This document shows positions 25,364-41,922 of a DNA stretch of 64,000 nucleotides, piece by piece. The stretch spans positions 1-64,000 of the IMG/VR virus record IMGVR_UViG_3300023202_000383. One strand, given 5' to 3'. The notes below the pieces were generated by a model that saw nothing but the letters and a program-made list of their open reading frames with translations, was not told the origin of the DNA and did no database searches. How positions within the stretch are numbered: the first letter of the stretch is position 1; each line of letters starts with the position of its first letter. The position numbers and the translations under genes are program-made.

Positions 25364-25585
25364 ATGTTTAAATGGCTTTTCGGCAGCAAGAAGCAAGAAA
25401 TGCATATCCATGTACATGTGGATGGTATTTTGAATGTTCAAGGTCAGGATTTAAAGCTTGGCATAAATTCGGATGCAGATATAAGCAACAATAAACAGGA
25501 TCCAAAAGAATCACACATACCTGAAATGGACCCGACAATTGGAGAAATTGACTTACCGCAGGTAGAATTTGGCGAAGAGGACTAA
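25364..25585 (+). CDS. small acidic protein with N-terminal amphipathic helix
   Basis: MFKWLFG start; preceded by the CAAATATA motif. Confidence 0.6.
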   Translation: MFKWLFGSKKQEMHIHVHVDGILNVQGQDLKLGINSDADISNNKQDPKESHIPEMDPTIGEIDLPQVEFGEED

Positions 25586-25586
25586 A

Positions 25587-26615
25587 ATGATTAAAATAGG
25601 ATTAGATCTTGGCACAAAGACAATCGTTTCTGCTAAAAGAGGCGAAGAAAACAAGCCTATATTCAAGCATGAAATAAATGGGTTTTATGAATTCCCGACA
25701 CCAGATAGCTTTACAAAAAAGCTGTTGGTTGGTCAGAAAATACCATTTGTTGAGAAGGATGGCAAGATATATGCTCTTGGCCGGAAGGCTGAGCAGTTTG
25801 CATATGCTGTCAATTCTACTCTTCGTAGACCGATGGCTGATGGTACAGTTAGCAAAGAGGAAGAAGCCATTAATATTATGGCATCGATTGTCCATGCTAT
25901 AATTGGCAAGTTAGATGATGATGCAATATTGTACTATTGTATCCCAGCAGACGCTATAAATAAGAGCACAAATGTGCAGTTCCACCAGAAGATTGCACAG
26001 ATGATAATTGATCGGTATCAAAGAAGTAAAGTAACTGTCAAGGGTTATCCTATCAATGAAGCCAGAGCGTTAGCTATAGGTTCTGGTGAGCCGGTTTGTA
26101 TTGCTGTGTCATTTGGTGCTGGTATGGTCAATGTTTGTTATTGCATGTACGGCATGTCAGTGTTTGAATTCAGTTTAGTTGGTAGCGGAGACCGGGTTGA
26201 TGCGGAGGCTGCTAGGCAGTTTGGATATGATCCAGAAAATCCAAATAAGAGCAGTCGCGAAACGCCGACAACCATGTGTAAGAGAAAGCACCAAATAGAT
26301 CTGACAAAATCTAAAGATGAAGTAGATAGAAAAGACCAGGCGATAATGATTTCGTATCAGATTCTGATAGAGAATGTTGTTGACGGTATTATAAAGGGTT
26401 TCAACGAAAACGAAGAAAAAGCCAAGATAGATCAGGCAATCCCTGTTGTAATAGCTGGTGGTACTTCATCTCCTCCGGGGTTCGGCGAATATTTTGAGGA
26501 GATTATGAAGTCTAAAGAACCCCCGTTTGAAATATCCACTATAACGGTACATCCTAGACCATTATATGCTGTTGCGGAAGGTTGTCTTATCGCTTCTGAG
26601 AGTCATGAGGAATAA
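25587..26615 (+). CDS. actin-fold ATPase (MreB/MamK/ParM superfamily)
   Basis: GLDLGT (phosphate 1), NEARA (connect 1), SFGAG (phosphate 2), IAGGTS (adenosine), PLYAVAEG (connect 2). Confidence 0.85.
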   Translation: MIKIGLDLGTKTIVSAKRGEENKPIFKHEINGFYEFPTPDSFTKKLLVGQKIPFVEKDGKIYALGRKAEQFAYAVNSTLRRPMADGTVSKEEEAINIMASIVHAIIGKLDDDAILYYCIPADAINKSTNVQFHQKIAQMIIDRYQRSKVTVKGYPINEARALAIGSGEPVCIAVSFGAGMVNVCYCMYGMSVFEFSLVGSGDRVDAEAARQFGYDPENPNKSSRETPTTMCKRKHQIDLTKSKDEVDRKDQAIMISYQILIENVVDGIIKGFNENEEKAKIDQAIPVVIAGGTSSPPGFGEYFEEIMKSKEPPFEISTITVHPRPLYAVAEGCLIASESHEE

Positions 26616-26640: not shown

Positions 26641-26883
26641 ATGGCACATCATGTAGTAGGTATAGGTCTATTTTCAGTTGCCAGAGATGGCACTGTTATG
26701 CCTGGAAAAGAAGGTACGATAGCTCAGGTTGCTACTTCTAATCTAGAAAGAAGAATTGTACCAACTAAAGGTGTAGATAGCTCAATGAATTATCCCACAA
26801 TAGTTGAATATCTAGATTTAGAAGAAGATGCTGGCTTTGATCTGGTTCATATAGACCAATATACTATAATAACTAAGGGCTAA
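26641..26883 (+). CDS. hypothetical protein
   Basis: AGGAGG RBS. Confidence 0.7.
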   Translation: MAHHVVGIGLFSVARDGTVMPGKEGTIAQVATSNLERRIVPTKGVDSSMNYPTIVEYLDLEEDAGFDLVHIDQYTIITKG

Positions 26884-26884
26884 A

Positions 26885-27310
26885 ATGCCGAGAAAGAGCC
26901 TAGAAGACAGGCTATGTGAAGCGTTATTAAGTCATTCGTCAAAAGACAATGACCAGTTTGATGAATATGTTGAAGATATCAAAGATCTCATGGGGTCATC
27001 TGGAGTTCTAGAAGAAGGCAAAAAGATAACTGTTACTACTATAATAGATACTGATGAAGATGAAGAAAAGATAGATCCTCAGGTAAAATTAAATATCCCA
27101 GATGAAGCAAAAAACAATTTCATGAACAAGGCTCAGGAATTGGGAAATTTTGATAGTCCTGCTTGGGTTGAGCAAGTTGTCAATGGTCTAAAGCAAGCGG
27201 GGGTTCAAGGAATGAACCCTATTGAGGATGATGAAAAGCCTGTAACTAAGAAAGAGATCATGTATCTAATATCTATGCTGATTGATCTCATAAAAACAGG
27301 AAAAGTATAA
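26885..27310 (+). CDS. hypothetical acidic protein
   Basis: Operon-packed ORF. Confidence 0.7.
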   Translation: MPRKSLEDRLCEALLSHSSKDNDQFDEYVEDIKDLMGSSGVLEEGKKITVTTIIDTDEDEEKIDPQVKLNIPDEAKNNFMNKAQELGNFDSPAWVEQVVNGLKQAGVQGMNPIEDDEKPVTKKEIMYLISMLIDLIKTGKV

Positions 27311-27915
27311 TGGCGCTAGAAGGTAAGGGACTAAACCTTAAAGGCGACAACACTTTCAAACCAGTTACCCCAGGCGTTAGAGTCACAGATATAGTTGTTA
27401 GAGGTGGCGGGGGAACGGTAACATTCTCTGATGGTGTTACTGTAGAATATTTATTTCAATTTATACAAGATCCCAGTATACCGTCTGGCGGTATCTTCGA
27501 TGTCACTCTGCAGGGCGATAGAGCTAAGAGAACGTATGAAAATGTGATATCTCAAGCTGTTTGTGATATGGTTGATTGGGTGACTCAGTGTTCCAGTCTC
27601 AATAGGCGAGTTTCTGAATTAGAAAAGTTACTTGGTAGAGGTGTTGAATTTACGTTCGAGATTGAGGATTGGGACGATCTTGGTGTAAAGAATCAGATCC
27701 ACATTATAAATGAAGGAACTCCTGGGCCTGGAGAAATTGGTCCACATGAATTAGGTACTTCTAGATCATTCCATATATCTGTTTGGAAAAGGGATGGGTC
27801 CCCTGCGATATTCGGCGTAGATACTGAATTCGAAATCAATTTAGATACTGGATTAATCAAACTTATTAAAGCTCCTTTAGGTAAGCCATTTGCTGGCAGG
27901 GTTATTGTAAGTTGA
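27310..27915 (+). CDS. putative virion/fibre protein
   Basis: C-terminal PGPGEIGPHEL...FAGRVIV module shared with 28294..28992. Confidence 0.55.
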   Translation: MALEGKGLNLKGDNTFKPVTPGVRVTDIVVRGGGGTVTFSDGVTVEYLFQFIQDPSIPSGGIFDVTLQGDRAKRTYENVISQAVCDMVDWVTQCSSLNRRVSELEKLLGRGVEFTFEIEDWDDLGVKNQIHIINEGTPGPGEIGPHELGTSRSFHISVWKRDGSPAIFGVDTEFEINLDTGLIKLIKAPLGKPFAGRVIVS

Positions 27916-28238
27916 TTAGGCTGAAAGCTATAGAACTCGTTGAAGCAAGAAATGCTTTTGAACCATATTTAAGTAGGCAATTGCCGTATGGTTTGTCTAA
28001 AAGAATGGGCAATATTGTAGCTGAACTTGACAAGCATATTTTAAGGTTAAAATCGCATCGCCTTGCTATGGCCGATAAATATAAAGAACTTGACGACCCT
28101 GAAGGATTTAATAAGAAGTCAATAGAATTAATGATGTCAGACGTAAAATTAGACGTTGATAAGATTCCTGAAGAACTTATTGATAAAGTAGAAGTCAGAC
28201 CATCAGATATGAAATATCTTTCGCTGTTTGTTGAATGA
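27912..28238 (+). CDS. hypothetical helical protein
   Basis: Overlapping, operon-packed ORF. Confidence 0.55.
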   Translation: MIRLKAIELVEARNAFEPYLSRQLPYGLSKRMGNIVAELDKHILRLKSHRLAMADKYKELDDPEGFNKKSIELMMSDVKLDVDKIPEELIDKVEVRPSDMKYLSLFVE

Positions 28239-28293
28239 TTAATTCTTTAACAAATATATTATGAAAGATTAACTCTAATGAAAGAGATATCTG

Positions 28294-28992
28294 ATGTCTA
28301 AAACTTTTTATGAAGCAATTATCGCGCAGGGTGGCTTTGCTGGGCAGGTATTTGATGTTGCTGCTGGTCCTGCCAACACCGATGTGATTGATGCTCTTTT
28401 GAGTGCCAGCGATGGTGTTCTTACGGAGAATGCTCCAGTCAATATGATATCAACCGGTGCTCTCTCTGCTGGAGCTGGTACTGATGGTATTGTTGACCTT
28501 GATATTACTGCGTTGGAGCAGGAAGGTCGCTGGTTCTGGCTTTCTGTTAGAAACAGTGATATCGGAACAATTAGCTTAACTGTTACTTCTACCACAGATA
28601 TTAATGGTGGCGGTGCCACCTTAACTATCAGTAGTGCTCAGGACCTGTTGTTTGTTCATGAATCTGGAGGCACTTGGAGAGCTTATCGCCAAGAACTTAG
28701 CACAGCCCCAACAAATGCTAAGATTTTCCGCGATACATTTGCTGCTAGTGATTGGTCTGGTGGGCCTACTAACTCTATTACAGTAATACAAACTGGCGCT
28801 CCTGGTGCTGGTGAAATCGGGCCTCATGGATTAGCTATTGCTAGTTCTTATGCTGTTCAGGTATATCGAGATTCAGACGATGAGCTTGTGGATCTTGGTA
28901 CAGTAGTAGATGGTGGCACCGGTGATATCACCTTGACTAAAACTGGCCTTGGTACTAATTTTGATGGTCGTGTGATTGTCGTTGGTGACTAA
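28294..28992 (+). CDS. putative virion/fibre protein
   Basis: G/T/A-rich beta-type sequence; PGAGEIGPHGL...FDGRVIV module. Confidence 0.6.
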   Translation: MSKTFYEAIIAQGGFAGQVFDVAAGPANTDVIDALLSASDGVLTENAPVNMISTGALSAGAGTDGIVDLDITALEQEGRWFWLSVRNSDIGTISLTVTSTTDINGGGATLTISSAQDLLFVHESGGTWRAYRQELSTAPTNAKIFRDTFAASDWSGGPTNSITVIQTGAPGAGEIGPHGLAIASSYAVQVYRDSDDELVDLGTVVDGGTGDITLTKTGLGTNFDGRVIVVGD

Positions 28993-29013
28993 AACTTATG
29001 AGGGGGGCTGGCG

Positions 29014-29205
29014 ATGGACGCCGACAAAGTATATAAAGATCTAAAGGATGAAGCTAATGCTCTCATTGGTCGCGAGAGAGAGCTGGAGAGTAGGATAGAA
29101 GCTGTCAAAACTTTGAGAAGCAATAACAGAGATCGAAGAGTTAGGATTGAGAAGCTTGAGGCTCAGCTTGCGGAATTAATGGATGACGTTCTTGATAACA
29201 AATAA
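29014..29205 (+). CDS. small coiled-coil protein
   Basis: GAGGGG RBS; heptad pattern. Confidence 0.6.
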   Translation: MDADKVYKDLKDEANALIGRERELESRIEAVKTLRSNNRDRRVRIEKLEAQLAELMDDVLDNK

Positions 29206-29232
29206 GAAATAAACGCTGGTTTATAAAGTGGT

Positions 29233-29991
29233 ATGGCTAGAGAGTTCTTTGATACTGTTGCTACTAAAGCTGGTTTGGCTGGCGAATATGAAGAACTAAT
29301 TGAGTCTGAATTCGCCGCCTCGGCTGGACCAGCGTATACGCCCGGCGAAGATGGAATTTTTAGGGTAGTTGCCTCTAGGACAATTCAGTTATTGAAGGGT
29401 AGTCCAATCTATGTGGAGACTTTTCAGGACTCTGCTGCCACCCTACGAGTTCCGTCTGGGCTAATAGCAAGCAATGATGCCAACGATGGTAGATTTTATT
29501 TTGTCAAGAACAGCGGAATTGGGAATGTTGCATTACAAGATCACTTAGGTGGATCTTTGGCGGCAATCCGTAAAGGTCAATTTGTTGTTGCCCTACATGG
29601 AGATGATGATAATTGGGATGCTTCTGGGTTGCTTAGTTCCGACGCCGTCGTCGAAGTCAAGAACACGTTGACGACCACGGACACACTGCTGAACACGATC
29701 GCCACGATCGACGTCGACCCCAGCACCGTACACCATCTGGACGTGACGATCACGGCGCGGGAGGGCGACAATAATAGAGGGTCGTTCGTGCGTAAGGCCA
29801 CGATTTACCGTAATTCGACGGGCGGGGCAGCAATCGAGAATAACGTAATCGTGGTATTTGACGAGAGCAGCAGCGGTAACTTTAAGATAGCTGTCGTGGC
29901 GAGCGGCAACAGCATACTCATTCAGGTTCAGGATGAGCAGGGGCAAACGGTGAACTGGACCAGTTGGCACAAACTCTACTCACAGGCGTGA
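29233..29991 (+). CDS. putative fibre/structural protein, chimeric (AT-rich 5' half, GC-rich 3' half)
   Basis: Codon composition switches abruptly near 29640 with no break in frame. Confidence 0.65.
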   Translation: MAREFFDTVATKAGLAGEYEELIESEFAASAGPAYTPGEDGIFRVVASRTIQLLKGSPIYVETFQDSAATLRVPSGLIASNDANDGRFYFVKNSGIGNVALQDHLGGSLAAIRKGQFVVALHGDDDNWDASGLLSSDAVVEVKNTLTTTDTLLNTIATIDVDPSTVHHLDVTITAREGDNNRGSFVRKATIYRNSTGGAAIENNVIVVFDESSSGNFKIAVVASGNSILIQVQDEQGQTVNWTSWHKLYSQA

Positions 29992-29992
29992 C

Positions 29993-30634
29993 ATGATTAC
30001 CGGCATCACACAATTCGGGTTGGAGGGGCGTGTAGCAACGGTGGATCACGACCCGGCTATCGTGTCGACCGATGTCCCCGCAGGTTCGATTATCCTGTCG
30101 ACCTCCACAGGATTGCTCTACCGAAAACTCACCGGCGGCAGCAACACGGATGTGTTGCCGATGACCGCTTCCAGTCAGCCGTTCGATTGGGACAGCGGGG
30201 CGTCGGCGGTCGCGGCGGTCGTCGCGGCCGGGATGCTGTCGCTCGAATTGCTTGCCGATACCGACTCGAAGGTAGTCGGCGGCGACGTTGCCCCGCTGCA
30301 CGTCGACCTCGATCAGGCGTTGGAGCTTGACGTCAAGATCGTCACCCTCAGCTTGGGCGACGCGTCGGCCGACGCGCACCTGCGGCTGACGGCCCGCTAC
30401 GTGGGGTTGGGCGAGGCGGCGGACAAGACGCCCGACGAGACGATCGACCACATCTTTGAAGTCGCCAACGTAGATAAGTGCGTGCACGCCGTGACGTTCA
30501 CACTGGACCCGTCGCTTATCTCCCCCGAAGACCTGCTAAACCTGGAGCTGTCGCGGCTGGGCACGTCAGCGAGTGACGTGTTTACCGGCTCCATCGGCGT
30601 TGCCGAGAGGTCGCTGCTGAGGTTCTTTAACTGA
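29993..30634 (+). CDS. putative structural (beta-rich) protein in GC island
   Basis: Coupled to neighbours; high GC3. Confidence 0.65.
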   Translation: MITGITQFGLEGRVATVDHDPAIVSTDVPAGSIILSTSTGLLYRKLTGGSNTDVLPMTASSQPFDWDSGASAVAAVVAAGMLSLELLADTDSKVVGGDVAPLHVDLDQALELDVKIVTLSLGDASADAHLRLTARYVGLGEAADKTPDETIDHIFEVANVDKCVHAVTFTLDPSLISPEDLLNLELSRLGTSASDVFTGSIGVAERSLLRFFN

Positions 30635-31164
30635 TGGCAAGCACGTACGAACTGATACTGTTCCGCGAGGAGACCCGAGACGACGGGAAGGTGGCGTTGC
30701 TGCGTATCCCGTTGGTGGCCGGTGCGGGGATCGACCTCGACGCGGTGATCGGGGAGGTATCCGCCGGTAGCGGTGTGAGCGTGCAGGAGGGATACGCCGA
30801 GAGCGAAGGGACCAGTTCGACGACCAGCACCAACTTTCAGCAAAAGCTCCGCGCCAGCTTGACGGGTCTAGACGCCGGTACGTATGAGGTGGCGTGGTCT
30901 TGTGAGGTGTTGCCCGGCAAAAACAATCTGGCTGCCCGCGTGCGGGTTCAAGTGGATGACACGACGACGCTAAACAGCCCTGACCCGGTCCTCAATCGAG
31001 ACAATAGCGGGGGCAACGTGAAGGGCTGGATGCCTCTCAGTGGGTTCCGTCAATTGGCATTGAGCGCCGGGGATCATGACTTCGACATCGACTTTGCTTC
31101 ACCTCAGAACGGAAAGTCAGTAGATATCCGGTTTGCGCGTATCAAAATAGCGAGGACAAATTAA
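30634..31164 (+). CDS. putative structural/fibre-tip protein in GC island
   Basis: TGATG coupling; beta-sandwich-like composition. Confidence 0.65.
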   Translation: MASTYELILFREETRDDGKVALLRIPLVAGAGIDLDAVIGEVSAGSGVSVQEGYAESEGTSSTTSTNFQQKLRASLTGLDAGTYEVAWSCEVLPGKNNLAARVRVQVDDTTTLNSPDPVLNRDNSGGNVKGWMPLSGFRQLALSAGDHDFDIDFASPQNGKSVDIRFARIKIARTN

Positions 31165-32106
31165 GTGGCCGAGCAAGCATACACGTACAGCATCGCCAGC
31201 GACTTCCCGTCGGGCGCGGTCAACACGCAGAAGCTGCACGACGAGGTCGTGGCCGACACGGCGATCACGACGCAGCTCGACCGCATCGACACCGACGGCG
31301 ACGGCTTGTCAATCGTGTTTCAGGCGGCGCTGTCGGCGGCGGAGAAGACGGCGCTGGACGGCGACACGACCGGACCGGCCGGGGGGCTGATCGCGCAGCA
31401 CGACAACAGCGCGTCCGCCCCCGACTACGGGAAGATGCAGATCGACGGGATCTCCCCGGACGCCAACGGCTCGCTGCCGCAGGCCCCGATCATCTCCACG
31501 CCGGGCCACCGGCTCAACGACCGCGACGTGCTGGTGCGGGTGGGCGAGTTCGACAACCCGTTCGAGGACCTGCGGGTCAACCCCGACGACAACAAGGAAG
31601 TGGCGTGGGGCGAGGTCACGTGCGACCCGGCCGACACCGATCCGGCGAACAAGACCGGGGTATTCAAGCTCGACGGCAACGGCGACTGGGTCCGCTGCAC
31701 CGACCAGACCGACGCGGCCGCCAACGCCGGGCTCACGGTCCTGGAGTACCAGGCCCGGCAGGGCGGCGTGGCCGGGGGCGATGCGCTCAAGTACGACGTG
31801 CGGGGCGGGACGCTGTGGGTCGACTCCAACGTGCCGGACGACGGCGACCGCTGGTCGCACCGCGTCTATTCGGTCGGTGCCCCGGACCTGTCGGCCGTCC
31901 TCGGCGGCCGGGTGCCGTTCTTCGACGGTTACCTGTTTCCCTATCGCAACAACTGGATGCAGACGCTCAATCCCGTGGCGTTCCCGATGGATCCGTCGGC
32001 GTCGGCGGCGGCGAGCATCGTCCGCGTGTGGTTCTATTACAAGGCGGGCACGGCGTACGAGCACGTGCTGCGGTTCCACCTGTACCGACCGACCGGAAGC
32101 TGGTAG
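31165..32106 (+). CDS. putative structural protein in GC island
   Basis: GTG start directly after the upstream stop; very high GC3. Confidence 0.7.
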   Translation: MAEQAYTYSIASDFPSGAVNTQKLHDEVVADTAITTQLDRIDTDGDGLSIVFQAALSAAEKTALDGDTTGPAGGLIAQHDNSASAPDYGKMQIDGISPDANGSLPQAPIISTPGHRLNDRDVLVRVGEFDNPFEDLRVNPDDNKEVAWGEVTCDPADTDPANKTGVFKLDGNGDWVRCTDQTDAAANAGLTVLEYQARQGGVAGGDALKYDVRGGTLWVDSNVPDDGDRWSHRVYSVGAPDLSAVLGGRVPFFDGYLFPYRNNWMQTLNPVAFPMDPSASAAASIVRVWFYYKAGTAYEHVLRFHLYRPTGSW

Positions 32107-32118
32107 GGTTTCCCATTC

Positions 32119-32190
32119 ATGAAGCTAATATTCTGCCCAGACTGCCGGGACGTGTTTAAGCTAGTCCGCGATGAGCCCCGTAAATGCTGA
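32119..32190 (+). pseudogene. truncated N-terminus of a small Zn-binding protein (MKLIFCPDCRDVFKLVRDEPRKC)
   Basis: CxxC...C start that stops at the island boundary. Confidence 0.5.
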
Positions 32191-32237
32191 GATTCTTGCT
32201 ATATCGAGACCCATCTGCTTAGTATTTGGATTAAGCT

Positions 32238-32888
32238 ATGGCTGACAAGATCAGTGTGCTTATGCCAACATATAATCGTGCGCACTTGATAGGTGTGTCT
32301 ATAAAGTCTATATTGTCCCAGACCCATAAAAATGTTGTTTTGTGCATCTATGATGATGGGTCTACTGACAATACAGAAGATGTCGTAAAATCATTTGGCG
32401 ATAACAGAATCATATATCATAAATCCGGAAAGAATTCTGGGTGTCCAGTTGCTAGAAATAAACTTCTTGAGATGGCCAATACTAGGTATGCTTGTTGGCA
32501 AGATAGTGATGATATCTCAAATAAGCATAGAATAAGAGAACAATTGAAGGCTATAAAGAAGTCGAAGGCGGCTATGGTTTGGTCTACGTTTAGGTGGTTT
32601 GACAAAGATATTGGCGATTCTTGGATGGAAGAACCAAAATCGCATAGTGGTACGGCTGCCCATGCTAGCATAATGTTTGAAGTATCTAAGGCCGTGCCAT
32701 TTAGATTGGTAAAAACTTTGGGTGGAGAAGATGCTAAGTGGCGTAGAGAAATAGAATCAGTTTATGGCAGGACGTTAAAAATCCCCAAAATATTGTATTA
32801 TGTAAGAAAGCACAATGATAGGATTGGGGTATGGAAGAAGAATCCTAAAGCCAATAAAGACTGGTACAACAGGATGGTCAAAAGATGA
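32238..32888 (+). CDS. glycosyltransferase family 2
   Basis: ISVLMPTYNR, YDDGSTD, WQDSDD. Confidence 0.92.
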   Translation: MADKISVLMPTYNRAHLIGVSIKSILSQTHKNVVLCIYDDGSTDNTEDVVKSFGDNRIIYHKSGKNSGCPVARNKLLEMANTRYACWQDSDDISNKHRIREQLKAIKKSKAAMVWSTFRWFDKDIGDSWMEEPKSHSGTAAHASIMFEVSKAVPFRLVKTLGGEDAKWRREIESVYGRTLKIPKILYYVRKHNDRIGVWKKNPKANKDWYNRMVKR

Positions 32889-33529
32889 CACTAAAATATT
32901 TAGTGGTTGGGACTGGCAGATGTGGTACTGGCTATATATCAAAATCGTTTGATAAAATTGGCATCCCATGTGGGCATGAAGAAATATTTAGCTTAACTAG
33001 AGTTAAACGCATAGATAACTTAAGAGTCAAAGAAAATCTAAATAAGTCCAAAAAAGAAGCCGAGTCAAGTTGGCTAGCCGTTCCGTGGTTAGATAATTAT
33101 GTGATAATACCGGAAGATTGTAAGATCATTCATATAACTAGACATCCAAAGGATACCATAGAATCACTTTTAGACACTGGAATGTTATCTAGATATGACA
33201 ATAAATATACACAATTTGCGTTTAGAAATATGCCGAGGATGAGGCCGGAGTATGACCCTATTATAAATTGTGCTATTTGGTACGTTTGGTGGAACAGGAA
33301 AATAGAAAACACAACCAGAAATGTAATAAGGCATAAAGTAGAAGACGATATAACTAATTTGTTTGATAGAATAGGACTGCCACACAATAATAAGCTATTT
33401 AATAACACTAAATATAATAGCAGGGTATCTAAAAAGAGAAGACAAGTAGATCTCAAGGAAGAACTTAGCGGGAAACCGATATTAAAATATTTATTGAGCA
33501 TGGCAAGCGAATATGGATATGAAATGTGA
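32885..33529 (+). CDS. P-loop sulfotransferase-like protein
   Basis: VVGTGRCGTGY, GHEE, IIHITRHPKDTIES. Confidence 0.7.
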   Translation: MTLKYLVVGTGRCGTGYISKSFDKIGIPCGHEEIFSLTRVKRIDNLRVKENLNKSKKEAESSWLAVPWLDNYVIIPEDCKIIHITRHPKDTIESLLDTGMLSRYDNKYTQFAFRNMPRMRPEYDPIINCAIWYVWWNRKIENTTRNVIRHKVEDDITNLFDRIGLPHNNKLFNNTKYNSRVSKKRRQVDLKEELSGKPILKYLLSMASEYGYEM

Positions 33530-33702
33530 AAGACGTCGGCAAAGCCAAACTGGAATCAGAGAAAGCTTTAACTGAGTATCTAAAATGCCAGCAAGAACTG
33601 CTGGTAATGATCAATAAACAAATGGATCTGGGAAGAATCTACGCTGAGAAGAGAGCCGAATATTTGGCTTTGAAAGAAGATAATGAGCCAGGAATTGATT
33701 AA
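33526..33702 (+). CDS. small helical hypothetical protein (58 aa, absent from the ORF track)
   Basis: GTG overlapping the upstream TGA; open to TAA at 33702. Confidence 0.45.
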   Translation: MKDVGKAKLESEKALTEYLKCQQELLVMINKQMDLGRIYAEKRAEYLALKEDNEPGID

Positions 33703-35327
33703 GGTTTCAATATAAATTTATAATGTCCAGCATCCCACAGTCTTCTATATTTATTATTAAACATATTTTCGGCCTCGGTAAGACGCGAGTCGAAATTTTC
33801 TAGTAATTTTGATAATTTGTGTTTTTGAAAGTGTTGGCGAGAATACAATATCGATGTGTTGCCGTCTTTATAATATTTATAATTTGGCTTAGTTAAACCG
33901 CATGGTTTGAATCCTAATTTTTTATATAAATTTCCTGTCGAATATCTTGCGTCTGCATATGTTAAAATTGATTTTGGGTCATGTAATGCTATAAAATGAT
34001 TTAGTAGTTTTCCTGCTCCCCCGATAGCTGTTGAACCTATAGCTTGTGCGTATCTTATTATTTCCCATTTATATTTATGGTGCTTGGCAAAAGACATGCA
34101 TGCGACTAATTCTCCATTATATGTTAATCCAATTCTTACCGATGCATCCCGCGATCCATATATATGGTTTTCAGTCATAAATGAATCGTAATCTTTTGTG
34201 TTCAACGATATTATTTTACATTTTCTGGCGTATAATTTTGATGAATACCCAAGTTTATGATTTATTATTGATTTGACTATATTTTGTTTGTTTGACCATT
34301 CGTCCTCGTTTATTTGCAGAAGTTGTATATTGTTTTCTACGCATCTAGTATGTTTAGCTTGATGTTTAAATCTTTCGTCTTTTGATTCAGTATGGTTGTA
34401 TGAATGGTAATATAACCCATTATATTCGATAGCTACGTTATGATTTGGCAGATAGATATCGATTTCTAATGGATATATTGTCTTTCTATCGTTAATAATA
34501 TATTCAGTATTTATCGATTTTATATATTCTATTATTTCTTGGTGTGGTTTAGAAATCGAGTTAGAGCATTTAGGGCATCCGTGTCCGTTTAAATGATTAC
34601 TTACTGTTTGGGAAAAATTGCCGTGTATGATACATGTTATTGTGATTGGTTCCATGTACCCGCTGTAATTGGATTTGTCATATGAATATTTGTCGCCGTG
34701 GATCGATATTGCTCTATTTATTATATCTTCTGTTGTAGGTGTGTTTATTGCACATTTAGGGCAACCGTGGCCTTCGAGGTGCCTTCTGGTTAATTGTTTA
34801 AATTTGCCATGTTTCGGGCATTTTATTATTATGTGACTTCGATATGATTTATATATCGAATCGCTATAATCATATTTGTTATTGTGTAATTTTGATGATT
34901 TATTTATAAAATCGTCAATTGTATTACTTAAATTTTTTATTCCGCATAATTTGCACCCATACTTTCCGTAGATGTGTGATTTTGGTGTTTGTTCGAATTC
35001 GCCGTGTTCTGGGCATATTATTGTGATTTTTGTATAGCTATTGACATACTCAGATTTACTATAATCATACTTATCGCCGTGCACTAATGTTGCTTTTTCT
35101 ATAAATTTATTTAGTGGCAATTTAAGATTTTGTTTTTGTTGTTGCCTAAAACATTTTTTGCATCTTGCGCCTTTTTTGTGATTTCTAGCGCGTTGTCTAA
35201 ACTCTCCGTGTTCCGGGCATATTATTGTGACGCGTCCGCTCAATTCAATTTCTGTAACCTTTGAATAGTCATACTTGTTATTGTGTATCAGGGATGATTC
35301 ATGTATAAAGCGTTGTAATTTATTCAT
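33699..35327 (-). CDS. Hef-like free-standing endonuclease: DUF723-type Zn repeats + Vsr/EDxHD nuclease + Mom/GNAT-like domain
   Basis: Four KYDYSK...ICPxHGxFxQ...CxxC repeats; EIDIYLPNHNVAIEYNGLYYH; GGAGKLL..LTYADARYS.G.LY..LGF. Confidence 0.8.
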   Translation of the reverse strand: MNKLQRFIHESSLIHNNKYDYSKVTEIELSGRVTIICPEHGEFRQRARNHKKGARCKKCFRQQQKQNLKLPLNKFIEKATLVHGDKYDYSKSEYVNSYTKITIICPEHGEFEQTPKSHIYGKYGCKLCGIKNLSNTIDDFINKSSKLHNNKYDYSDSIYKSYRSHIIIKCPKHGKFKQLTRRHLEGHGCPKCAINTPTTEDIINRAISIHGDKYSYDKSNYSGYMEPITITCIIHGNFSQTVSNHLNGHGCPKCSNSISKPHQEIIEYIKSINTEYIINDRKTIYPLEIDIYLPNHNVAIEYNGLYYHSYNHTESKDERFKHQAKHTRCVENNIQLLQINEDEWSNKQNIVKSIINHKLGYSSKLYARKCKIISLNTKDYDSFMTENHIYGSRDASVRIGLTYNGELVACMSFAKHHKYKWEIIRYAQAIGSTAIGGAGKLLNHFIALHDPKSILTYADARYSTGNLYKKLGFKPCGLTKPNYKYYKDGNTSILYSRQHFQKHKLSKLLENFDSRLTEAENMFNNKYRRLWDAGHYKFILKP

Positions 35328-35397
35328 AATAAAATATCTTTGATTACAGATAGATCCTCTGCATTGCGTGTTGTATTTTATATACATGGTTGACATA

Positions 35398-36747
35398 ATG
35401 AAATATAATGGTCCTACAGACTTTGCTCATCTTCATGTCCATACTTTATATAGTACGCTTGATGGGGTTCAATCTCCAGAAGAATTGTTTTCTACGTGCA
35501 AAGAAAGAGGATGGAGTGCGTTAGCCGTAACCGAGCATGGGACATTGGCATCAGTCCCAGACAATTATGCGGCTGCAAAAGAATACGGCGTAAAGTATAT
35601 AGTTGCTTGCGAAATTTATTACAATGATTATGAACCGACTAGGCAAGATCTTGTTAAAGAAGATGTTAAAATTCGCAAGCTAAAAGAAACCGACCCTAAT
35701 TTTTATTATAAAATGTCTAGAAATAGGCATTTAACAGTCCTTGCTAAAAACGATAAGGGTGTGGAGAACATAATAAAATTGACCACTCAAGCGTGGGAGA
35801 CTGGATTTTATTATAGGCCGAGGATATGGTTTGATAAATTAGATGAATATAGAGAGGGTTTATTGGTATTGAGTGGATGTTTAAATGGGCCTGTTTCTCA
35901 TGAGTTAAGACATGGGAATTTAAGGTCTGATGATATGAGAGGTGCATTAGACTATATACATAAATTCAAAGAAGTATTTGGCGATGATTATTTTGTAGAA
36001 TTGCAGATGCCTTGTCTTCCTGATTTTCCTGACCACAAAGTCTTCCGTGCATTAAATCATATAGCTAACAAGTACAATATACCGAAAGTTCTTACAAATG
36101 ACGCACATTATCTAAATCGTGAAGACTTTGAAATCCAGAAATTAATGATGGCTATATCCCAGGGTTTAACTGTTGATGATCCGAATCTGTTCCATGTAAA
36201 TAGTGATGAGCAATATCTTAAAACCAGAGCAGATCTATGGCACACATTTAAGACTGGGAAAGACGGCAAATATTGTGAATATGTGACTGATAGCGAATTT
36301 GAAGATATGTGCAACAACACATTGGTAGTTGCCGGTAAATGTGATAATTTCGAACCTGATTTGTCGTCGAAGGTTCCTACATTAGATAATGACGAGCAGA
36401 TCTTAAGAACCCTTGTGTACGATAGGCTTAAGCAAGAGGGATTCGATAAAGATGAAACTAAGTACAATATAGACAATAAAGAAGTTACTTATAGAGAACA
36501 AGCCGACATAGAATTGAATAGGTTTATTGAGAAGAATTTCGCCAGCTATTTCTTGATAACCAGAGATTTGGTGCAGTATAGTTTAGATAACGGTTGGCCT
36601 GTTGGACCGCGAGGTTCAGTTGGCGGCAGTCTAGTGTGTTATTTATTGGGCATAACCGAGTTGGATCCAATAAAATGGAATTTATCGTTTAACAGGTTTT
36701 TAAGCCCCTCGCGCGGAGGAAAGATGCTAAACATTAAGGCAGAATAG
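35398..36747 (+). CDS. dnaE: DNA polymerase III alpha, fragment 1 (PHP domain + N-terminal palm)
   Basis: HLHVHTLYSTLDG, TEHG, NDAHY, YFLIT, GPRGSVGGSLV, RFLSPSR, then stop. Confidence 0.9.
   Translation: MKYNGPTDFAHLHVHTLYSTLDGVQSPEELFSTCKERGWSALAVTEHGTLASVPDNYAAAKEYGVKYIVACEIYYNDYEPTRQDLVKEDVKIRKLKETDPNFYYKMSRNRHLTVLAKNDKGVENIIKLTTQAWETGFYYRPRIWFDKLDEYREGLLVLSGCLNGPVSHELRHGNLRSDDMRGALDYIHKFKEVFGDDYFVELQMPCLPDFPDHKVFRALNHIANKYNIPKVLTNDAHYLNREDFEIQKLMMAISQGLTVDDPNLFHVNSDEQYLKTRADLWHTFKTGKDGKYCEYVTDSEFEDMCNNTLVVAGKCDNFEPDLSSKVPTLDNDEQILRTLVYDRLKQEGFDKDETKYNIDNKEVTYREQADIELNRFIEKNFASYFLITRDLVQYSLDNGWPVGPRGSVGGSLVCYLLGITELDPIKWNLSFNRFLSPSRGGKMLNIKAE
36728..36746 (+). repeat. direct repeat flanking the inserted endonuclease gene (partner at 38604-38628)
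   Basis: TAAACATTAAGGCAGAATA here; the partner reads TAAACATTAAG-ATTAAG-GCAGAATA. Confidence 0.85.
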
Positions 36748-36777: not shown

Positions 36778-38613
36778 ATGATAAATGTACAACGAAGCAA
36801 AGAAGTGTTTGGATTAAAAAGCATCAATAGGATTCCTAAAAAACAGAAAGTTATATGTAATTGTGATGTTTGTGGGGTTGAATCACGTATTACTAAGCAG
36901 CACCATTATATATGCAGCAAACGTGCTGGTTTATATAGATGTAAAGATTGTGGTAGAAAAGCCATGGCATCTAAAGTATCAAAAGCCATGATATCAAAAT
37001 GGCAAAACGACAAATACAAATCCAAGCAGATTGGCAGGACTCATAGCGATGAATTAAAGGAATATGCTAGGCAGAGAGCTATCAAATTGTGGAAAGATAA
37101 AGAATATGTGGCAAAGTATAATGCTGGGTTTGACCCGGCCAAGGCTAGAAAGAATCTAAAGGCCACCAGATCGGTTGCCAATAAAGCTGCATCGCTTGCT
37201 ATGGCTGATAAATGGCAGGAAAAAGAATATCGCAGTAAAATGTCAGATCAATCAGCTAAGCTATGGAGTAACGATTGTTATAGAAACAAAGTAATAAGTA
37301 GCCTCAAAAAACATTATTCGTCATTAGAAGTTTTAGATAGATGTTCAAATAGAGCGAAAAAATTGTGGAAGAATAATGATTATAGGGATAGGTGGTTCAA
37401 ATCATTTATGCAATCATTTGGCAATGAAAGGTTACACGAAATTTCATTACAAAGTGCCAAGAATTGGGGAGACCGAGAATATAGAGATAAAATAGAATCA
37501 CAATGGGACGATCAAAAACGTGCAGAAATGTCCGAAATATGTAAAGAATGGTGGACTGATGATAGGAGAGCTGAAGTTTCTGAGATTATGATAAGTAGGT
37601 GGTCGGACCCTAATTTTAGAAAGAAAACAATAAAAGCATTTATTGATTCATGGACTGAAGAACGCAGGCAGGCTGCTAAAGATTCATGGACTGAAGAACG
37701 CAGGCAGGCTGCGTCTGATAGATCCAGGAATTTGTGGAAAGATCCGAAATATGTTAGCAAGATGGTTGATATGATCGGGAGGCCGTCGTCTTTAGAAATT
37801 CAATTCGCCAGCTTATTGGATGATTATGGCATCGAGTACACGCAACAGTTCCATTTAGGGCCATATTTATTTGATTTTAAGGTCAACGATGTCTTAATAG
37901 AAATTAATGGCGATTATTGGCATAGATTGCCGAAGACAATATCAAAAGACAAGGCTAAAGCTACTTATGTTGAAAAACATTATCAGCAATATCAGCTTAA
38001 GTATTTATGGGAGCATGAATTTTATCAATTAGAAAAGATTAATAAATTTATTGAATTCAGTTTTGTTGGTTCTGACGTAGAAGAGGTTGATTTTTCAGAA
38101 TTAAAATTTGTTACTGATATAGATTATGATTCAATAAAATCGTTAATTGAGAAATATCATTATAAAGGAAGTATTGGTCGGGGTGGGGTGTATTATGGTG
38201 TTATATATCGTGGTAATTTGATCGCTGGGTCTGTTGTTGGGTCACCAACTAGGAATGTTGTTGGTGGCGAGTTGTTACGATTTGTTATACACCCACAGTA
38301 TCAGGTCAAGAATCTTGCATCGTGGTTTTTGAGTAGAATCTCAAAGCATGCTTTGAGAGATTATGATTTATTGTTTACATTTGCTGATCCGAATTTTAAC
38401 AATTACGGCACAATATATGAGGCTAGCGGCTGGGAATTTGCTGGCGAAACAAAATCAGATTATTGGTATGTTAGCGAAGACGGTTGGGTTATGCATAAAA
38501 AGACTTTATGGAATAGAGCAAAGAATTTATGTATGTCAGAAAGGTATTTTGCTGAGGTTTTTGGATATAATCGGGTATATGGGTTGCCAAAGAGAAAGTA
38601 TATTAAACATTAA
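36778..38613 (+). CDS. free-standing endonuclease: helical W-repeats + DUF559/Vsr-like nuclease + Mom-like GNAT domain
   Basis: PSSLE...FDFKVNDVLIEINGDYWH; ELLRF...NLASWFLS...TFADPNFNNYGTIYEASGW. Confidence 0.8.
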   Translation: MINVQRSKEVFGLKSINRIPKKQKVICNCDVCGVESRITKQHHYICSKRAGLYRCKDCGRKAMASKVSKAMISKWQNDKYKSKQIGRTHSDELKEYARQRAIKLWKDKEYVAKYNAGFDPAKARKNLKATRSVANKAASLAMADKWQEKEYRSKMSDQSAKLWSNDCYRNKVISSLKKHYSSLEVLDRCSNRAKKLWKNNDYRDRWFKSFMQSFGNERLHEISLQSAKNWGDREYRDKIESQWDDQKRAEMSEICKEWWTDDRRAEVSEIMISRWSDPNFRKKTIKAFIDSWTEERRQAAKDSWTEERRQAASDRSRNLWKDPKYVSKMVDMIGRPSSLEIQFASLLDDYGIEYTQQFHLGPYLFDFKVNDVLIEINGDYWHRLPKTISKDKAKATYVEKHYQQYQLKYLWEHEFYQLEKINKFIEFSFVGSDVEEVDFSELKFVTDIDYDSIKSLIEKYHYKGSIGRGGVYYGVIYRGNLIAGSVVGSPTRNVVGGELLRFVIHPQYQVKNLASWFLSRISKHALRDYDLLFTFADPNFNNYGTIYEASGWEFAGETKSDYWYVSEDGWVMHKKTLWNRAKNLCMSERYFAEVFGYNRVYGLPKRKYIKH

Positions 38614-39015: not shown

Positions 39016-39496
39016 TAAAATAGACATATATTGCTTTGCTAGAGGCAAGGATAGTCCATACGCATATGGCATCCTTGTGGTCGCACATTATGGCGAAGAG
39101 TGTAAAGAGCACGAGAAATTTGGTTTCGTAGATGCGAAAACGCCTACTGAGGCCAATATCAAGATAATATTGATGGCGTTGAAGTCCGTTAAAGATGACT
39201 TTAAGGACCTCGATATCACTCTTCATGTAAGAAAATCTGCATTTTATTGTGTTGATAGAACATCTTGGGGAACCTATAGAACAAAGCCAACCAGACATCA
39301 TAAACTGATAGGTGCGGTGAGAAGTTTGTTTGACGAGCTTCCTAATGCAAGATCAAAGATGATATTCTCCAAATACCAAAAGTATGCTAAAAGATGTATA
39401 AAAAAGTCTAGGAGCATGTTTCATGCGAAACGACGCGAGTTGGGACGATATAAAGGTGATAGCGGTCAAGGAGCTCGTCCAGAAAAAGCTACCTAA
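39005..39496 (+). CDS. RNase HI-fold protein, catalytic acidic residues lost
   Basis: IDIYCFA (for IYTDG), YGILV, TPTEANIKIILMAL, ITLHVRKS (for TDS). Confidence 0.5.
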   Translation: MAPDKIDIYCFARGKDSPYAYGILVVAHYGEECKEHEKFGFVDAKTPTEANIKIILMALKSVKDDFKDLDITLHVRKSAFYCVDRTSWGTYRTKPTRHHKLIGAVRSLFDELPNARSKMIFSKYQKYAKRCIKKSRSMFHAKRRELGRYKGDSGQGARPEKAT

Positions 39497-41920: not shown

Positions 41921-41922
41921 AT

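What the first reader, a model, noticed from the sequence alone, without database searches (positions are those of the whole stretch)
29640..32190. Sharp GC-rich island swapping fibre-like genes, with the breakpoint inside a gene
Seen: codon style flips from AT-rich to strongly GC-rich at about 29640 within ORF 29233-29991 with the frame preserved. It stays high through three more genes and reverts at about 32190. Inference: recent receptor-binding module exchange from a high-GC phage, hinting at a high-GC host or co-infecting phage for this AT-rich virus.
Basis: partly seen in the sequence, partly recalled or inferred. Interest (0 to 1): 0.6.

Follow-up and report, generated by a model that had tools for sequence, protein, structure and literature searches.

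The report
Imported GC-rich fibre cassette in phage
A 2.5-kb stretch of very GC-rich DNA inside an AT-rich giant phage from a desert salt pan is real. It is a block of virion-surface (fibre or spike) genes taken from high-GC phages and spliced in frame at a protein-domain boundary, which is a clean but ordinary kind of phage module swap.

Summary
GC rises from about 0.41 to 0.63 over 29,638-32,106 (z = 7.4 against 101 other windows of the 256.5-kb record). GC3 flips from 0.33 to 0.70-0.94 at codon 135 of ORF 29233-29991, with the frame kept, and falls back right after the stop of ORF 31165-32106.

It is not an assembly chimera. Contigs from two JGI metagenomes and two Logan run assemblies of the same Namib salt-pan study carry the junctions with at most one mismatch.

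Related AT-rich jumbo phages share the upstream block at 44-66% amino-acid identity. That homology stops at residue 129 of the chimeric protein. Ten relatives keep this N-terminal domain but carry at least five different C-termini.

The imported part is a C-terminal domain plus genes of 213, 176 and 313 aa. It has syntenic relatives in uniformly 60% GC phage contigs, where two of the proteins are collagen-like fibres. An AT-rich version of part of the cassette also exists.

The folds are beta-sandwich knobs like those of phage spikes and baseplate adaptors. A tail versus capsid location is unresolved.

The island has two compositional layers that break at 31,165-31,180. No donor and no host were identified. 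A high-GC host is only a weak lead. This is a known kind of event.

The parts
27310..27915 (+). Resident AT-style gene (201 aa) of the same modular family. Its C-terminal 86 aa are 43% identical to the C-terminus of the 232-aa protein.
   Evidence: BLASTP. It is 56-61% identical to genes in the related jumbo contigs L010 and L013. GC3 is 0.30. No Pfam, PHROG or NCBIfam hit.
28294..28992 (+). Resident AT-style paralogue (232 aa). Its N-terminal 130 aa are weakly homologous to the N-terminal domain of the chimeric protein.
   Evidence: 24% identity, E 2e-4. It is 62-65% identical to the L010 and L013 orthologues. GC3 is 0.29.
29014..29205 (+). Small conserved protein (63 aa) that always precedes the chimeric gene in relatives.
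   Evidence: 37-48% identical to the 59- and 62-aa genes at the same position in L013 and L010.
29233..29637 (+). Resident part of the chimeric gene: the N-terminal anchor domain (aa 1 to about 134, AT-style codons, ending just after the motif HGDDDNWD).
   Evidence: GC3 is 0.33. It is 59-66% identical to L010 and L013 over aa 1-129 only. It is shared by 10 relatives, P0044-P0053. AlphaFold pLDDT is about 90 for aa 17-133. The fold resembles the knob of the Pa223 capsid spike and the Solidus tailspike (both Z 9.4) and CBA120 TSP4 (Z 7.8). Foldseek matches are the KP1 baseplate at E 7e-4 and T4 gp9 at E 4.5e-3.
29638..29991 (+). Imported part of the chimeric gene: the GC-rich C-terminal domain (aa 135-252).
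   Evidence: GC3 is 0.73, with the change point at codon 135. It has no homology to backbone relatives. It is 32% identical (E 4e-13) to the C-terminal 111 aa of a 476-aa collagen-like fibre protein in the 60.5% GC contig L022, and that alignment starts at aa 130. Its last 41 aa are 56% identical to an AT-rich copy in L014. The structure model is poor here (pLDDT below 50).
29993..30634 (+). Imported gene 2 (213 aa).
   Evidence: GC3 is 0.81. It is 56% identical to P0055 in the 42% GC contig L014. Its N-terminal 54 aa are 43% identical to the start of a 417-aa collagen-like fibre protein that follows the 476-aa protein in L022. Atlas look-alikes are all viral and include collagen-tailed, Mtd_N and PTL_trimer clusters.
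30634..31164 (+). Imported gene 3 (176 aa). GC3 decays towards its 3' end.
   Evidence: GC3 is 0.70. Aa 52-175 are 28% identical (E 8e-14) to the 201-aa gene just upstream of the 313-aa homologue in the 60% GC contig L003. Aa 1-44 are 52% identical to L014. The last 24 or so codons have GC3 of about 0.43.
31165..32106 (+). Imported gene 4 (313 aa): a widely shared 80-aa N-terminal adaptor domain plus a jelly-roll C-terminal domain. It forms a separate, higher-GC compositional layer.
   Evidence: GC3 is 0.94, with an internal break at about 31,180 (logLR 26.8, 0 of 500 shuffles reach it). Full-length homologues are 33-45% identical. They include L003 (60% GC, 37%) and L006 (53% GC, 45%). The N-terminal domain is about 60% identical in many proteins that have other C-termini. 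AlphaFold pLDDT is 87. The jelly roll's best match is Z 7.3, to phage cement proteins, CBMs and TNF-like folds, which is generic.
32107..32237 (.). 3' junction zone: a 131-nt spacer holding a 23-codon mini-ORF (32,119-32,190, CPDC motif, GC 0.51, GC3 0.63). It may be a truncated remnant.
   Evidence: Sequence and translation. No homologue was found in any fetched locus or in the genome. No terminator-like site was found.
32238..32888 (+). First resident gene downstream of the island: a family-2 glycosyltransferase with AT-style codons. It is not part of the import.
   Evidence: Pfam Glycos_transf_2, E 3e-29. GC3 is 0.38.

Best explanation
The window is the left part of an AT-rich (41% GC) jumbo phage from Namib salt-pan mats. 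The phage has a T4-type gp23 capsid gene, gp32, DnaB, a split DnaE, RecA and 35 tRNAs.

At 26.6-29.6 kb it carries a small block of modular virion-surface genes that related jumbo phages share. The last gene of that block encodes a trimer-type beta-sandwich N-terminal domain of about 130 aa, which is the conserved virion anchor. The C-terminal part after it differs from relative to relative.

In this phage lineage, the distal part of that gene and everything up to the next resident gene was replaced by DNA from phages of much higher GC (donor GC3 0.76-0.94, so genome GC of about 60-70%). The crossover lies in the roughly 20-nt linker after the motif HGDDDNWD (nt 29,620-29,640) and keeps the frame. 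The product therefore has the resident anchor and a foreign distal domain.

Three complete foreign genes (213, 176 and 313 aa) came along with it. Each looks like a short fibre or spike subunit with an N-terminal adaptor and a beta-sandwich head.

Inference: these four parts travel together because they assemble into one distal host-recognition structure, so the swap changed what the virion surface binds.

Shown: the composition break, the homology break, the domain boundary, the synteny with high-GC phage contigs, and presence in several assemblies.

Inferred: virion location, trimer state, receptor binding, one versus two import events, and the direction and date of the transfer.
For: Composition:
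- Searches give z = 7.4 and the GC3 jump from 0.33 to 0.73-0.94. GC1 also rises.

Not an artefact:
- L007 (JGI 3300023202, 332-kb parent contig) is 100% identical to the window.
- L008 (JGI 3300022719) and L002 (Logan SRR23862438) span both junctions with one mismatch each.
- L009 (SRR23862439) spans the 5' junction.
- All four come from one Namib study with several samples.

Recipient backbone:
- L010 (384-kb contig, 46% GC) and L013 (42.5% GC) share genes 26,641-29,619 at 44-66% identity. They have no GC island, and their homology ends at aa 129.
- Ten relatives share aa 1-130 and carry at least five unrelated C-termini, one of them with collagen repeats.

Domain boundary:
- pLDDT is about 90 up to residue 133 and below 50 after it.

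Donor-type context:
- L022 (163-kb viral contig, uniformly 60.5% GC) has, in the same order, a domain like the imported C-terminal domain, the start of a 213-like protein, a 301-aa gene and the 313-type N-terminal domain.
- L003 (161-kb contig, 60% GC) has the 176-like and 313-like genes side by side.
- Ten of 11 viral contigs carrying the 313-type N-terminal domain have 51-64% GC.

Fibre or spike nature:
- Fold matches of the anchor domain are to phage spike, tailspike and baseplate proteins, at Z 7.6-9.4. These stand above the background of Z about 5. Foldseek matches are the KP1 baseplate and T4 gp9.
- The L022 partners hit collagen-like tail-fibre PHROGs.
- The 213-aa protein's look-alikes are viral and collagen-tailed or Mtd-like.
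Against: - No donor was found. The closest relatives of the island proteins are only 32-56% identical.
- For three of the four parts, the closest relative is in a 42% GC contig (L014). The cassette type is therefore not confined to high-GC phages.
- The island has two compositional layers (GC3 0.76 versus 0.945, break at about 31,180). 'One swap from one donor' may be too simple.
- Fold matches for the 313-aa jelly roll are generic (best Z 7.3, which is the usual best score for models without a true match).
- The C-terminal domain of the chimeric protein could not be modelled.
- No family scan names any island protein.
- No reads were inspected.
- The five high-GC carrier records tested lack a gp23-type capsid gene. 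The donors are therefore not close kin of the recipient, and how the two met in one cell is unexplained.
Confidence: 0.75

Rival explanations
1. Same import, different place on the virion. The block encodes capsid spikes, head fibres or decoration proteins rather than tail receptor-binding proteins. The swap would then change capsid-surface adhesion or stability rather than the primary receptor.
For: - The anchor domain's joint best fold match is the C-terminal knob of the Pa223 capsid spike (Z 9.4). The Pa223 paper describes that knob as TNF-like and trimeric.
- The 313-aa jelly roll's best matches are the trimeric cement proteins of phages KHP40 and Pam1 (Z 7.3 and 6.5).
- In relative L010 the block lies 5-7 kb downstream of a gene with a weak Phage_cement_2 hit.
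- In this genome the block lies far from the baseplate-type gene at about 209-212 kb.
Against: - Equally good matches go to tailspike and baseplate proteins: Solidus tailspike (Z 9.4), CBA120 TSP4, KP1 baseplate and T4 gp9.
- In relative L013 the block lies about 5 kb upstream of a 1,395-aa Tail_P2_I baseplate protein.
- The L022 relatives hit tail-fibre PHROGs, although this is driven by their collagen repeats.
- The jelly-roll Z values are at background level.
Confidence: 0.3
2. Assembly chimera: a high-GC contig from another organism was wrongly joined into the phage contig.
For: The GC step is very sharp. The source is a complex metagenome. No read-level check could be made.
Against: - Both junctions recur with at most one mismatch in four assemblies, from at least two samples and two different assemblers.
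- The 5' junction keeps a 252-codon frame open and falls on a predicted domain boundary.
- The 3' edge falls three bases after a stop codon.
- No repeat that could cause a misjoin was noticed in the sequence read at the junctions. No repeat scan was run.
Confidence: 0.02
3. Native genes with locally biased composition. The cause would be selection for GC-ending codons in highly expressed virion genes, or a local mutational bias, with no transfer.
For: Other genes of the record also have raised GC3 without any obvious transfer. Examples are the gp23-type capsid gene (0.65), an AAA ATPase (0.77) and a VWA/metallopeptidase gene (0.68).
Against: - GC3 reaches 0.94 and GC1 rises too. This is far beyond any other gene of the record.
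- The step occurs in the middle of a gene, exactly where homology to all relatives ends.
- Relatives have other genes at this place and no GC step.
- Homologues of the island genes sit in phage contigs that are high-GC throughout.
Confidence: 0.03
4. The block was captured from the chromosome or a prophage of a high-GC bacterial host, not from a co-infecting phage.
For: - The mats are rich in high-GC Alphaproteobacteria and Planctomycetota.
- A glutamate dehydrogenase gene just left of the record is 60-64% identical to those of Phycisphaerae MAGs whose loci have 66-68% GC. The next-best groups are at 40-47%.
Against: - No relative of the 313-aa family was found in one genome each of 185,579 species, using the two motif patterns tried.
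- None was found in 401 Phycisphaerae genomes or in the five closest MAGs, using a profile.
- Every homologue with context lies on a phage-like contig, many over 140 kb.
- A second GC-rich gene of the phage has only about 30% identity to Planctomycetota.
Confidence: 0.1

Closest known systems
Distal tail-fibre module exchange in T-even phages (gp37 C-terminus with gp38), by recombination at conserved motifs. Cited from my own knowledge of the literature (Tetart et al. 1998), not read here.
   Same: The proximal part of the fibre gene is conserved. The distal part is exchanged together with the downstream partner gene(s). The crossover is in frame inside the gene. The result is a mosaic locus that differs between close relatives. 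The recipient here also has a T4-type gp23 capsid gene.
   Different: - There is no sequence similarity to gp37 or gp38.
- The proteins are short (176-313 aa), without long shafts.
- Three extra genes travel with the domain.
- The exchanged DNA differs from the recipient by more than 20 GC points, so ordinary homologous recombination between relatives is unlikely.
Tailspikes and fibres with a conserved N-terminal anchor and a swappable C-terminal receptor-binding part, as in CBA120 TSP1-4, Klebsiella and Acinetobacter phage depolymerases, and T4 gp9/gp10 adaptors
   Same: - The anchor domain (aa 10-136) superposes on domains of CBA120 TSP4 (Z 7.8), the Solidus tailspike (Z 9.4) and the KP1 baseplate (Z 7.6; Foldseek E 7e-4), and on T4 gp9 (Foldseek E 4.5e-3).
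- Relatives keep the anchor and vary the rest.
   Different: - No beta-helix or depolymerase domain was found.
- The matched domain is C-terminal in Pa223 and Solidus but N-terminal here.
- Similarity is of fold only (7-20% identity).
- Attachment to a baseplate has not been shown.
Pseudomonas phage Pa223 capsid spike gp52 (bioRxiv 10.1101/2025.06.11.659172)
   Same: This is the joint best structural match for the anchor domain (Z 9.4, rmsd 2.0 over 87 residues, chain residues 196-294, which is its TNF-like C-terminal knob). Both proteins are short, at about 250-290 aa.
   Different: Pa223 gp52 anchors through a 41-residue N-terminal arm and has a triple beta-helix, which is not seen here. There is no sequence similarity. 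The capsid location is untested here.
Collagen-like phage tail fibre proteins (PHROGs 6320, 5073, 30509, 1806 and others)
   Same: High-GC relatives of two island parts are the C-terminal knob and the N-terminal start of collagen-like fibre proteins (L022 476 aa and 417 aa; E down to 3e-75 against these PHROGs). One backbone relative (P0053) has collagen repeats after the same anchor.
   Different: The window's own four proteins have no collagen repeats and hit none of these families. They look like stalk-less versions.
Compositionally deviant islands (morons, horizontally acquired islands) in phage and bacterial genomes
   Same: A sharp deviation in GC and codon use, absence from relatives, and homologues in genomes of matching composition.
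   Different: - No promoter-terminator 'moron' unit was found.
- No integrase or transposase is adjacent. The nearest mobile-looking gene is a DUF723/zinc-finger ORF at 33,699-35,396 on the other strand.
- One edge is an in-frame fusion inside a structural gene rather than an insertion between genes.

Membership tests
Horizontally acquired island | Base and codon composition far from the rest of the genome, with sharp edges | tested here: met
   z = 7.4 against 101 windows. GC3 is 0.70-0.94 against a genome median of 0.40. Change points fall at 29,638/29,639 and 32,109.
Horizontally acquired island | Absent from relatives that share the flanking genes | tested here: met
   This holds for the 5' side. 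L010 and L013 share 26.6-29.6 kb, their homology ends at nt 29,619, and they show no GC step. The 3' flank (GT2 onward) is not syntenic in those relatives, so the 3' side could not be tested.
Horizontally acquired island | Homologues in a donor lineage of matching composition | tested here: inconclusive
   Syntenic relatives occur in 60% GC phage contigs L022 and L003, at only 28-56% identity. A 42% GC version also exists (L014). No near-identical donor is in the 5.8-billion-protein collection.
Horizontally acquired island | Physical continuity with the host replicon (not a misassembly) | tested here: met
   Four assemblies from at least two samples carry the junctions.
Modular phage fibre/spike (receptor-binding) proteins with a conserved anchor and an exchangeable distal part | N-terminal part conserved and C-terminal part variable among related phages | tested here: met
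   Ten relatives share aa 1-130 at 44-66% identity and carry at least five unrelated C-termini.
Modular phage fibre/spike (receptor-binding) proteins with a conserved anchor and an exchangeable distal part | Fold of known fibre, spike or baseplate-adaptor domains | tested here: inconclusive
   The anchor domain matches clearly above background (Z 9.4-7.6 to phage spike, tailspike and baseplate chains, against about 5 for the rest; Foldseek E 7e-4). The 313-aa jelly roll gives only generic matches (Z at most 7.3). The imported C-terminal domain could not be modelled.
Modular phage fibre/spike (receptor-binding) proteins with a conserved anchor and an exchangeable distal part | Encoded among virion structural genes | tested here: inconclusive
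   In relatives the block is near a cement-like gene (L010) or a baseplate Tail_P2_I gene (L013). In this genome it sits between an actin-like gene, glycosyltransferases and replication genes. The gp23-type capsid gene is at 115.6 kb and the baseplate-type gene at 209 kb.
Modular phage fibre/spike (receptor-binding) proteins with a conserved anchor and an exchangeable distal part | Presence in the virion, trimer formation and binding to a host surface receptor | not testable with these tools
   There is no isolate, proteome or host. One complex prediction gave no answer.
Collagen-like tail fibre proteins | Gly-X-Y collagen repeats forming the stalk | tested here: not met
   None of the four island proteins, nor the resident paralogues, has a Pfam Collagen or PHROG collagen-like hit. 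Only relatives elsewhere have them.
T4 gp9/gp10-type baseplate adaptors | Sequence or clear structural membership | tested here: inconclusive
   There is no family hit. The Foldseek match to T4 gp9 has E 4.5e-3 and low TM, because half of the model is unreliable.

The most novel reading that the evidence does not exclude
The AT-rich (41% GC) jumbo phage actually replicates in a high-GC host such as a Phycisphaerae-type planctomycete of the salt-pan mat. There it meets 60-70% GC phages and takes whole host-recognition cassettes from them without amelioration. The phage is possibly PurZ-bearing, that is, it may use the 2-aminoadenine base. On this reading the island would be a direct marker of a strongly GC-mismatched phage-host pair, and of gene flow between unrelated jumbo-phage lineages that share that host.
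Probability: 0.15. Interest if true: 0.65.

Novelty: new member of a known kind. Interest (0 to 1): 0.38.

Why it matters
This is a well-documented natural case of in-frame domain-plus-gene cassette exchange in an uncultured jumbo phage. The junction is resolved to about 20 nt and coincides with a structural domain boundary. The anchor domain is kept across ten relatives that carry different distal parts.

Three things follow:
- It marks where this phage group's virion-surface proteins can be recombined.
- It defines two widespread but unnamed adaptor domains: the 130-aa anchor, and the 80-aa N-terminal domain of the 313-aa family.
- It shows gene flow between phages that differ by more than 20 GC points. 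This constrains ideas about who co-infects whom in hypersaline mats.

It does not reveal a new kind of mechanism.

Tried and rejected
- **Read-level check.** Independent assemblies were used instead.
- **DNA search.** A search of the island against 50,697 phage records gave no match.
- **Family scans.** Pfam, PHROGs and NCBIfam scans of all island proteins gave nothing.
- **Related loci.** Searches with the actin-like protein and with the 213-aa alignment in viral contigs gave no relatives.
- **Degenerate pattern.** A DNA pattern for the HGD(D/N)D(D/N)WD motif in viral contigs gave six hits, all chance matches in about 60% GC contigs with no homology.
- **Bacterial genomes.** It was also not found in five Phycisphaerae/Kiritimatiellae MAGs or in 401 Phycisphaerae genomes.
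- **Capsid gene in carriers.** A gp23-type capsid gene was not found in five high-GC carrier records.
- **Complex prediction.** The imported C-terminal domain was tested with the 213-aa protein. The result was 'no answer' (score 0.00), which is evidence neither for nor against binding.
- **Mini-ORF 32,119-32,190.** No homologue was found anywhere. An off-by-one error was corrected.
- **Host lead.** The GC-rich VWA/metallopeptidase gene of the phage has only about 30% identity to Planctomycetota, so it gives no support.
- **Atlas shape search of the 313-aa model.** It recovered only its own 72-aa N-terminal-domain cluster. The rest was noise.
- **Not run.** The exhaustive HMMER search was not run. 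It returns no names or context, and the claim does not rest on the absence of relatives.
- **Housekeeping.** No alternative genetic code was used. No toxin gene was involved.

Full report
**What the window is.**
- The 64-kb window is the left end of a 256,507-bp IMG/VR virus record with 41.1% GC overall.
- Its genes mark a jumbo tailed phage:
  - a split DnaE-type polymerase;
  - RecA with an intein;
  - gp32 and a DnaB-type helicase;
  - an SbcCD-like pair and glycosyltransferases;
  - a PurA/PurZ-like gene and a volactin-like actin.
- Outside the window the record has a T4-type gp23 capsid gene and 35 tRNAs.
- The record was cut from a 332,374-bp contig of IMG metagenome 3300023202. That metagenome belongs to a study of Namib Desert salt-pan microbial mats and halites (bioRxiv 10.1101/2022.02.18.481119).

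**Check of the observation.**
- The GC step is real.
- In 200-bp windows GC climbs from 0.44-0.47 to 0.57-0.745 between 29.6 and 32.1 kb, and is 0.385 by 32.2 kb.
- Likelihood change points fall at nt 29,639 (all bases), at codon 135 of ORF 29233-29991 (third positions; nt 29,638), and at nt 32,109. The last is three bases after the stop of ORF 31165-32106.
- GC3 is 0.33 for codons 1-129 of the chimeric gene and 0.73 for the rest. It is 0.81, 0.70 and 0.94 for the next three genes, and 0.38 for the glycosyltransferase that follows. GC1 rises as well.
- The 2,468-bp island has GC 0.632. The 101 other windows of that size in the record have mean 0.409, sd 0.030 and maximum 0.512, so z = 7.4.
- No other ORF of the record comes near GC3 0.94.
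That tail holds a 23-codon mini-ORF with no homologue.

**Is it an assembly artefact?**
- The same sequence was, however, assembled independently several times:
  - a 9,412-bp contig of IMG 3300022719 (L008, one mismatch);
  - a 12,896-bp Logan contig of SRR23862438 (L002, one mismatch);
  - a 2,819-bp Logan contig of SRR23862439 (L009, one mismatch, 5' junction only);
  - the parent contig itself (L007, identical).
- These come from at least two samples of one study and from two assemblers.
- The frame stays open across the junction and the 3' edge abuts a stop codon. I take a misjoin as very unlikely.

**The recipient side.**
- Genes 26,641-29,619 have orthologues at 44-66% amino-acid identity, in the same order, in other jumbo-phage contigs: L010 (384 kb, 46% GC) and L013 (42.5% GC). 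Neither has a GC step.
- In both protein and six-frame comparisons the homology ends at residue 129 of the 252-aa protein, which is nt 29,619.
- A word search found ten relatives that share residues 1-130 up to the motif HGD(D/N)DxWD. After it they carry at least five unrelated C-terminal parts, one with collagen repeats.
- AlphaFold models residues 17-133 with pLDDT of about 90 and nothing reliable after 134.
- The homology break (aa 129), the fold boundary (aa 133/134) and the codon-usage break (codon 135) therefore coincide within about 20 nt. That stretch encodes a short linker.
- The neighbouring resident genes belong to the same shuffled family. The 232-aa protein shares the N-terminal domain (E 2e-4). 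The 201-aa protein shares the 232-aa protein's C-terminal 86 residues (43%).

**The imported side.**
- None of the four parts hits a curated family, but each has relatives in metagenomic phage contigs.
- The 313-aa protein:
  - It has full-length homologues at 33-45% identity.
  - Two have DNA in hand and lie in contigs of 60% (L003, from a 161-kb contig) and 53% GC (L006), uniform along their length.
  - In L003 the gene just upstream is homologous to the 176-aa protein (28%, E 8e-14), so that pair is syntenic.
- The best picture of the whole cassette is L022, from a 163-kb viral contig of 60.5% GC. It holds, in order:
  - a 476-aa protein whose last 111 residues align with residues 130-242 of the chimeric protein (32%, E 4e-13), so the alignment starts exactly at the junction;
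  - a 417-aa protein whose first 54 residues match the start of the 213-aa protein (43%);
  - a 301-aa gene;
  - a 339-aa protein with the N-terminal domain of the 313-aa family (56%).
- Both of the first two L022 proteins are collagen-like and hit tail-fibre PHROGs.
- Of 11 viral contigs that carry the 313-type N-terminal domain, ten have 51-64% GC and most exceed 140 kb.
- Five of those records were searched and have no gp23-type capsid gene, so these carriers are not close kin of the recipient.
- Two facts complicate the simple story:
  - A 1,055-bp contig of 41.8% GC (L014) carries the end of the C-terminal domain, a 213-aa homologue and the start of a 176-aa homologue at 52-56% identity. 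That is closer than any high-GC relative, so the cassette type exists in AT-rich phages too.
  - The island itself has two layers. GC3 is 0.76 up to about 31,180 and 0.945 after it (logLR 26.8; none of 500 shuffles reaches it). The last codons of the 176-aa gene drop to about 0.43.
- The donor was therefore itself a mosaic, or there were two imports.

**What the proteins look like.**
- The anchor domain of the chimeric protein:
  - It superposes on the TNF-like knob of the Pa223 capsid spike (Z 9.4, rmsd 2.0 over 87 residues) and on the Solidus tailspike (Z 9.4).
  - It also superposes on a fibre/chaperone complex (Z 8.3), CBA120 TSP4 (Z 7.8) and a Klebsiella phage KP1 baseplate chain (Z 7.6).
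  - Unrelated chains follow at Z of about 5 (the Pa223 domains are described).
  - Foldseek agrees weakly, with the KP1 baseplate at E 7e-4 and T4 gp9 at E 4.5e-3.
- The 313-aa model:
  - It is confident (pLDDT 87). It has a small alpha/beta N-terminal domain and a jelly roll spanning residues 112-311.
  - The jelly roll's matches (phage cement proteins, satellite-virus coats, CBM32/51, TNF-family ligands) peak at Z 7.3. That is the usual best score for models without a true match.
  - The N-terminal domain also exists as a free-standing 72-aa viral protein cluster.
- The 213-aa protein's nearest Atlas clusters are all viral and include collagen-tailed, Mtd_N and PTL_trimer sets.
- Together this supports 'short fibre or spike subunits on the virion surface'. 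It does not settle tail versus capsid.

**Mechanism proposed.**
- Shown: a conserved anchor domain is fused in frame to a foreign distal domain, followed by three foreign genes. In a high-GC phage, the relatives of these parts lie side by side in the same order.
- Inferred: the four parts form one distal assembly (anchor socket plus stacked short fibres or knobs). That is why the crossover sits in the linker and why the partners moved together.
- Inferred: the effect is a change of surface specificity, as in T-even gp37/gp38 swaps (my own knowledge).
- With a GC difference of more than 20 points, recombination was probably illegitimate or guided by very short homology.
- One complex prediction gave no answer and is not evidence either way.

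**Host and donor.**
- No donor was found, and no bacterial genome holds the family.
- The only host hint is a glutamate dehydrogenase gene in the parent contig, 5.7 kb left of the record start.
  - It has 43.5% GC.
  - Its closest relatives (60-64% identity, against 40-47% for the next groups) are in Phycisphaerae and Planctomycetota MAGs whose loci have 66-68% GC. There is also one Kiritimatiellae MAG at 57% GC.
- Planctomycetes are abundant in these mats.
- A second GC-rich phage gene gave no such signal.
- The 7 kb beyond the IMG/VR 'provirus' boundary has the same 40% GC as the phage. The boundary therefore says nothing about a host.

**Verdict.**
- It is unproven in its details (receptor binding, recency, a single donor, a high-GC host).
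- It is a clean new example of a known process.

Noticed in passing
window 18948-20156 (-); parent contig L039 13847-15241: A 402-aa protein's best NCBIfam hit is PurZ, the succino-amino-deoxyadenylate synthase (E 4e-43, 147.6 bits, below the 300-bit cutoff). An adenylosuccinate lyase gene lies just left of the record start. This is a candidate 2-aminoadenine (Z-base) pathway in a jumbo phage. DatZ, MazZ and DpoZ were not shown.
   Followed up: partly
window 35368-36747, 36778-38613, 39423-41192, 41905-43071: The DnaE-type polymerase is split into at least three ORFs: PHP plus the start of the NTPase domain, then the rest of the NTPase domain plus fingers, then HHH. A 611-aa ORF with a Mom-like domain sits between the first two pieces. 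A DUF723/treble-clef zinc-finger ORF lies on the opposite strand just upstream (33699-35396).
   Followed up: no
window 47576-49741: RecA is interrupted by an intein with a LAGLIDADG endonuclease domain.
   Followed up: no
window 25569-26615: A phage-encoded actin-like protein matches Pfam Volactin (E 6e-49), a family described from haloarchaea. It lies immediately upstream of the fibre-like block and is present in the same position in all near-identical contigs.
   Followed up: no
G000 115595-117151, 134677-135429, 219473-220366, 236139-237371, 242569-243222, 245210-246868: There are other, milder GC3-rich genes (0.65-0.77) outside the window. They are a gp23-type major capsid protein, DUF7873, DUF6744, an AAA ATPase, an unnamed gene and a DUF2201 VWA/metallopeptidase. 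They could reflect codon selection or further imports.
   Followed up: partly
G000 129258-154108 and 196366-206979: There are 35 tRNA genes in two clusters. They include a predicted suppressor-type tRNA (anticodon tta) on the minus strand and one with an odd anticodon loop.
   Followed up: no
parent contig L039 13499-20525 (left of window start): IMG/VR calls the record a provirus. However, the 7 kb beyond its left boundary has the same 40% GC, and it carries PurB, MotA/ExbB-like and glutamate dehydrogenase genes. The phage probably continues there. The GDH is closest (60-64%) to those of high-GC Phycisphaerae MAGs.
   Followed up: partly
window 32119-32190: A 23-codon mini-ORF with a CPDC motif and intermediate GC lies between the island and the glycosyltransferase. 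It may be the stump of a gene cut by the 3' crossover. No homologue was found.
   Followed up: yes
window 21286-24626 and 32238-33529: Several glycosyltransferase genes (GT1, three GT2) and a hydrolase-like gene flank the fibre-like block on both sides. This raises the possibility that virion or host surface glycans are modified.
   Followed up: no
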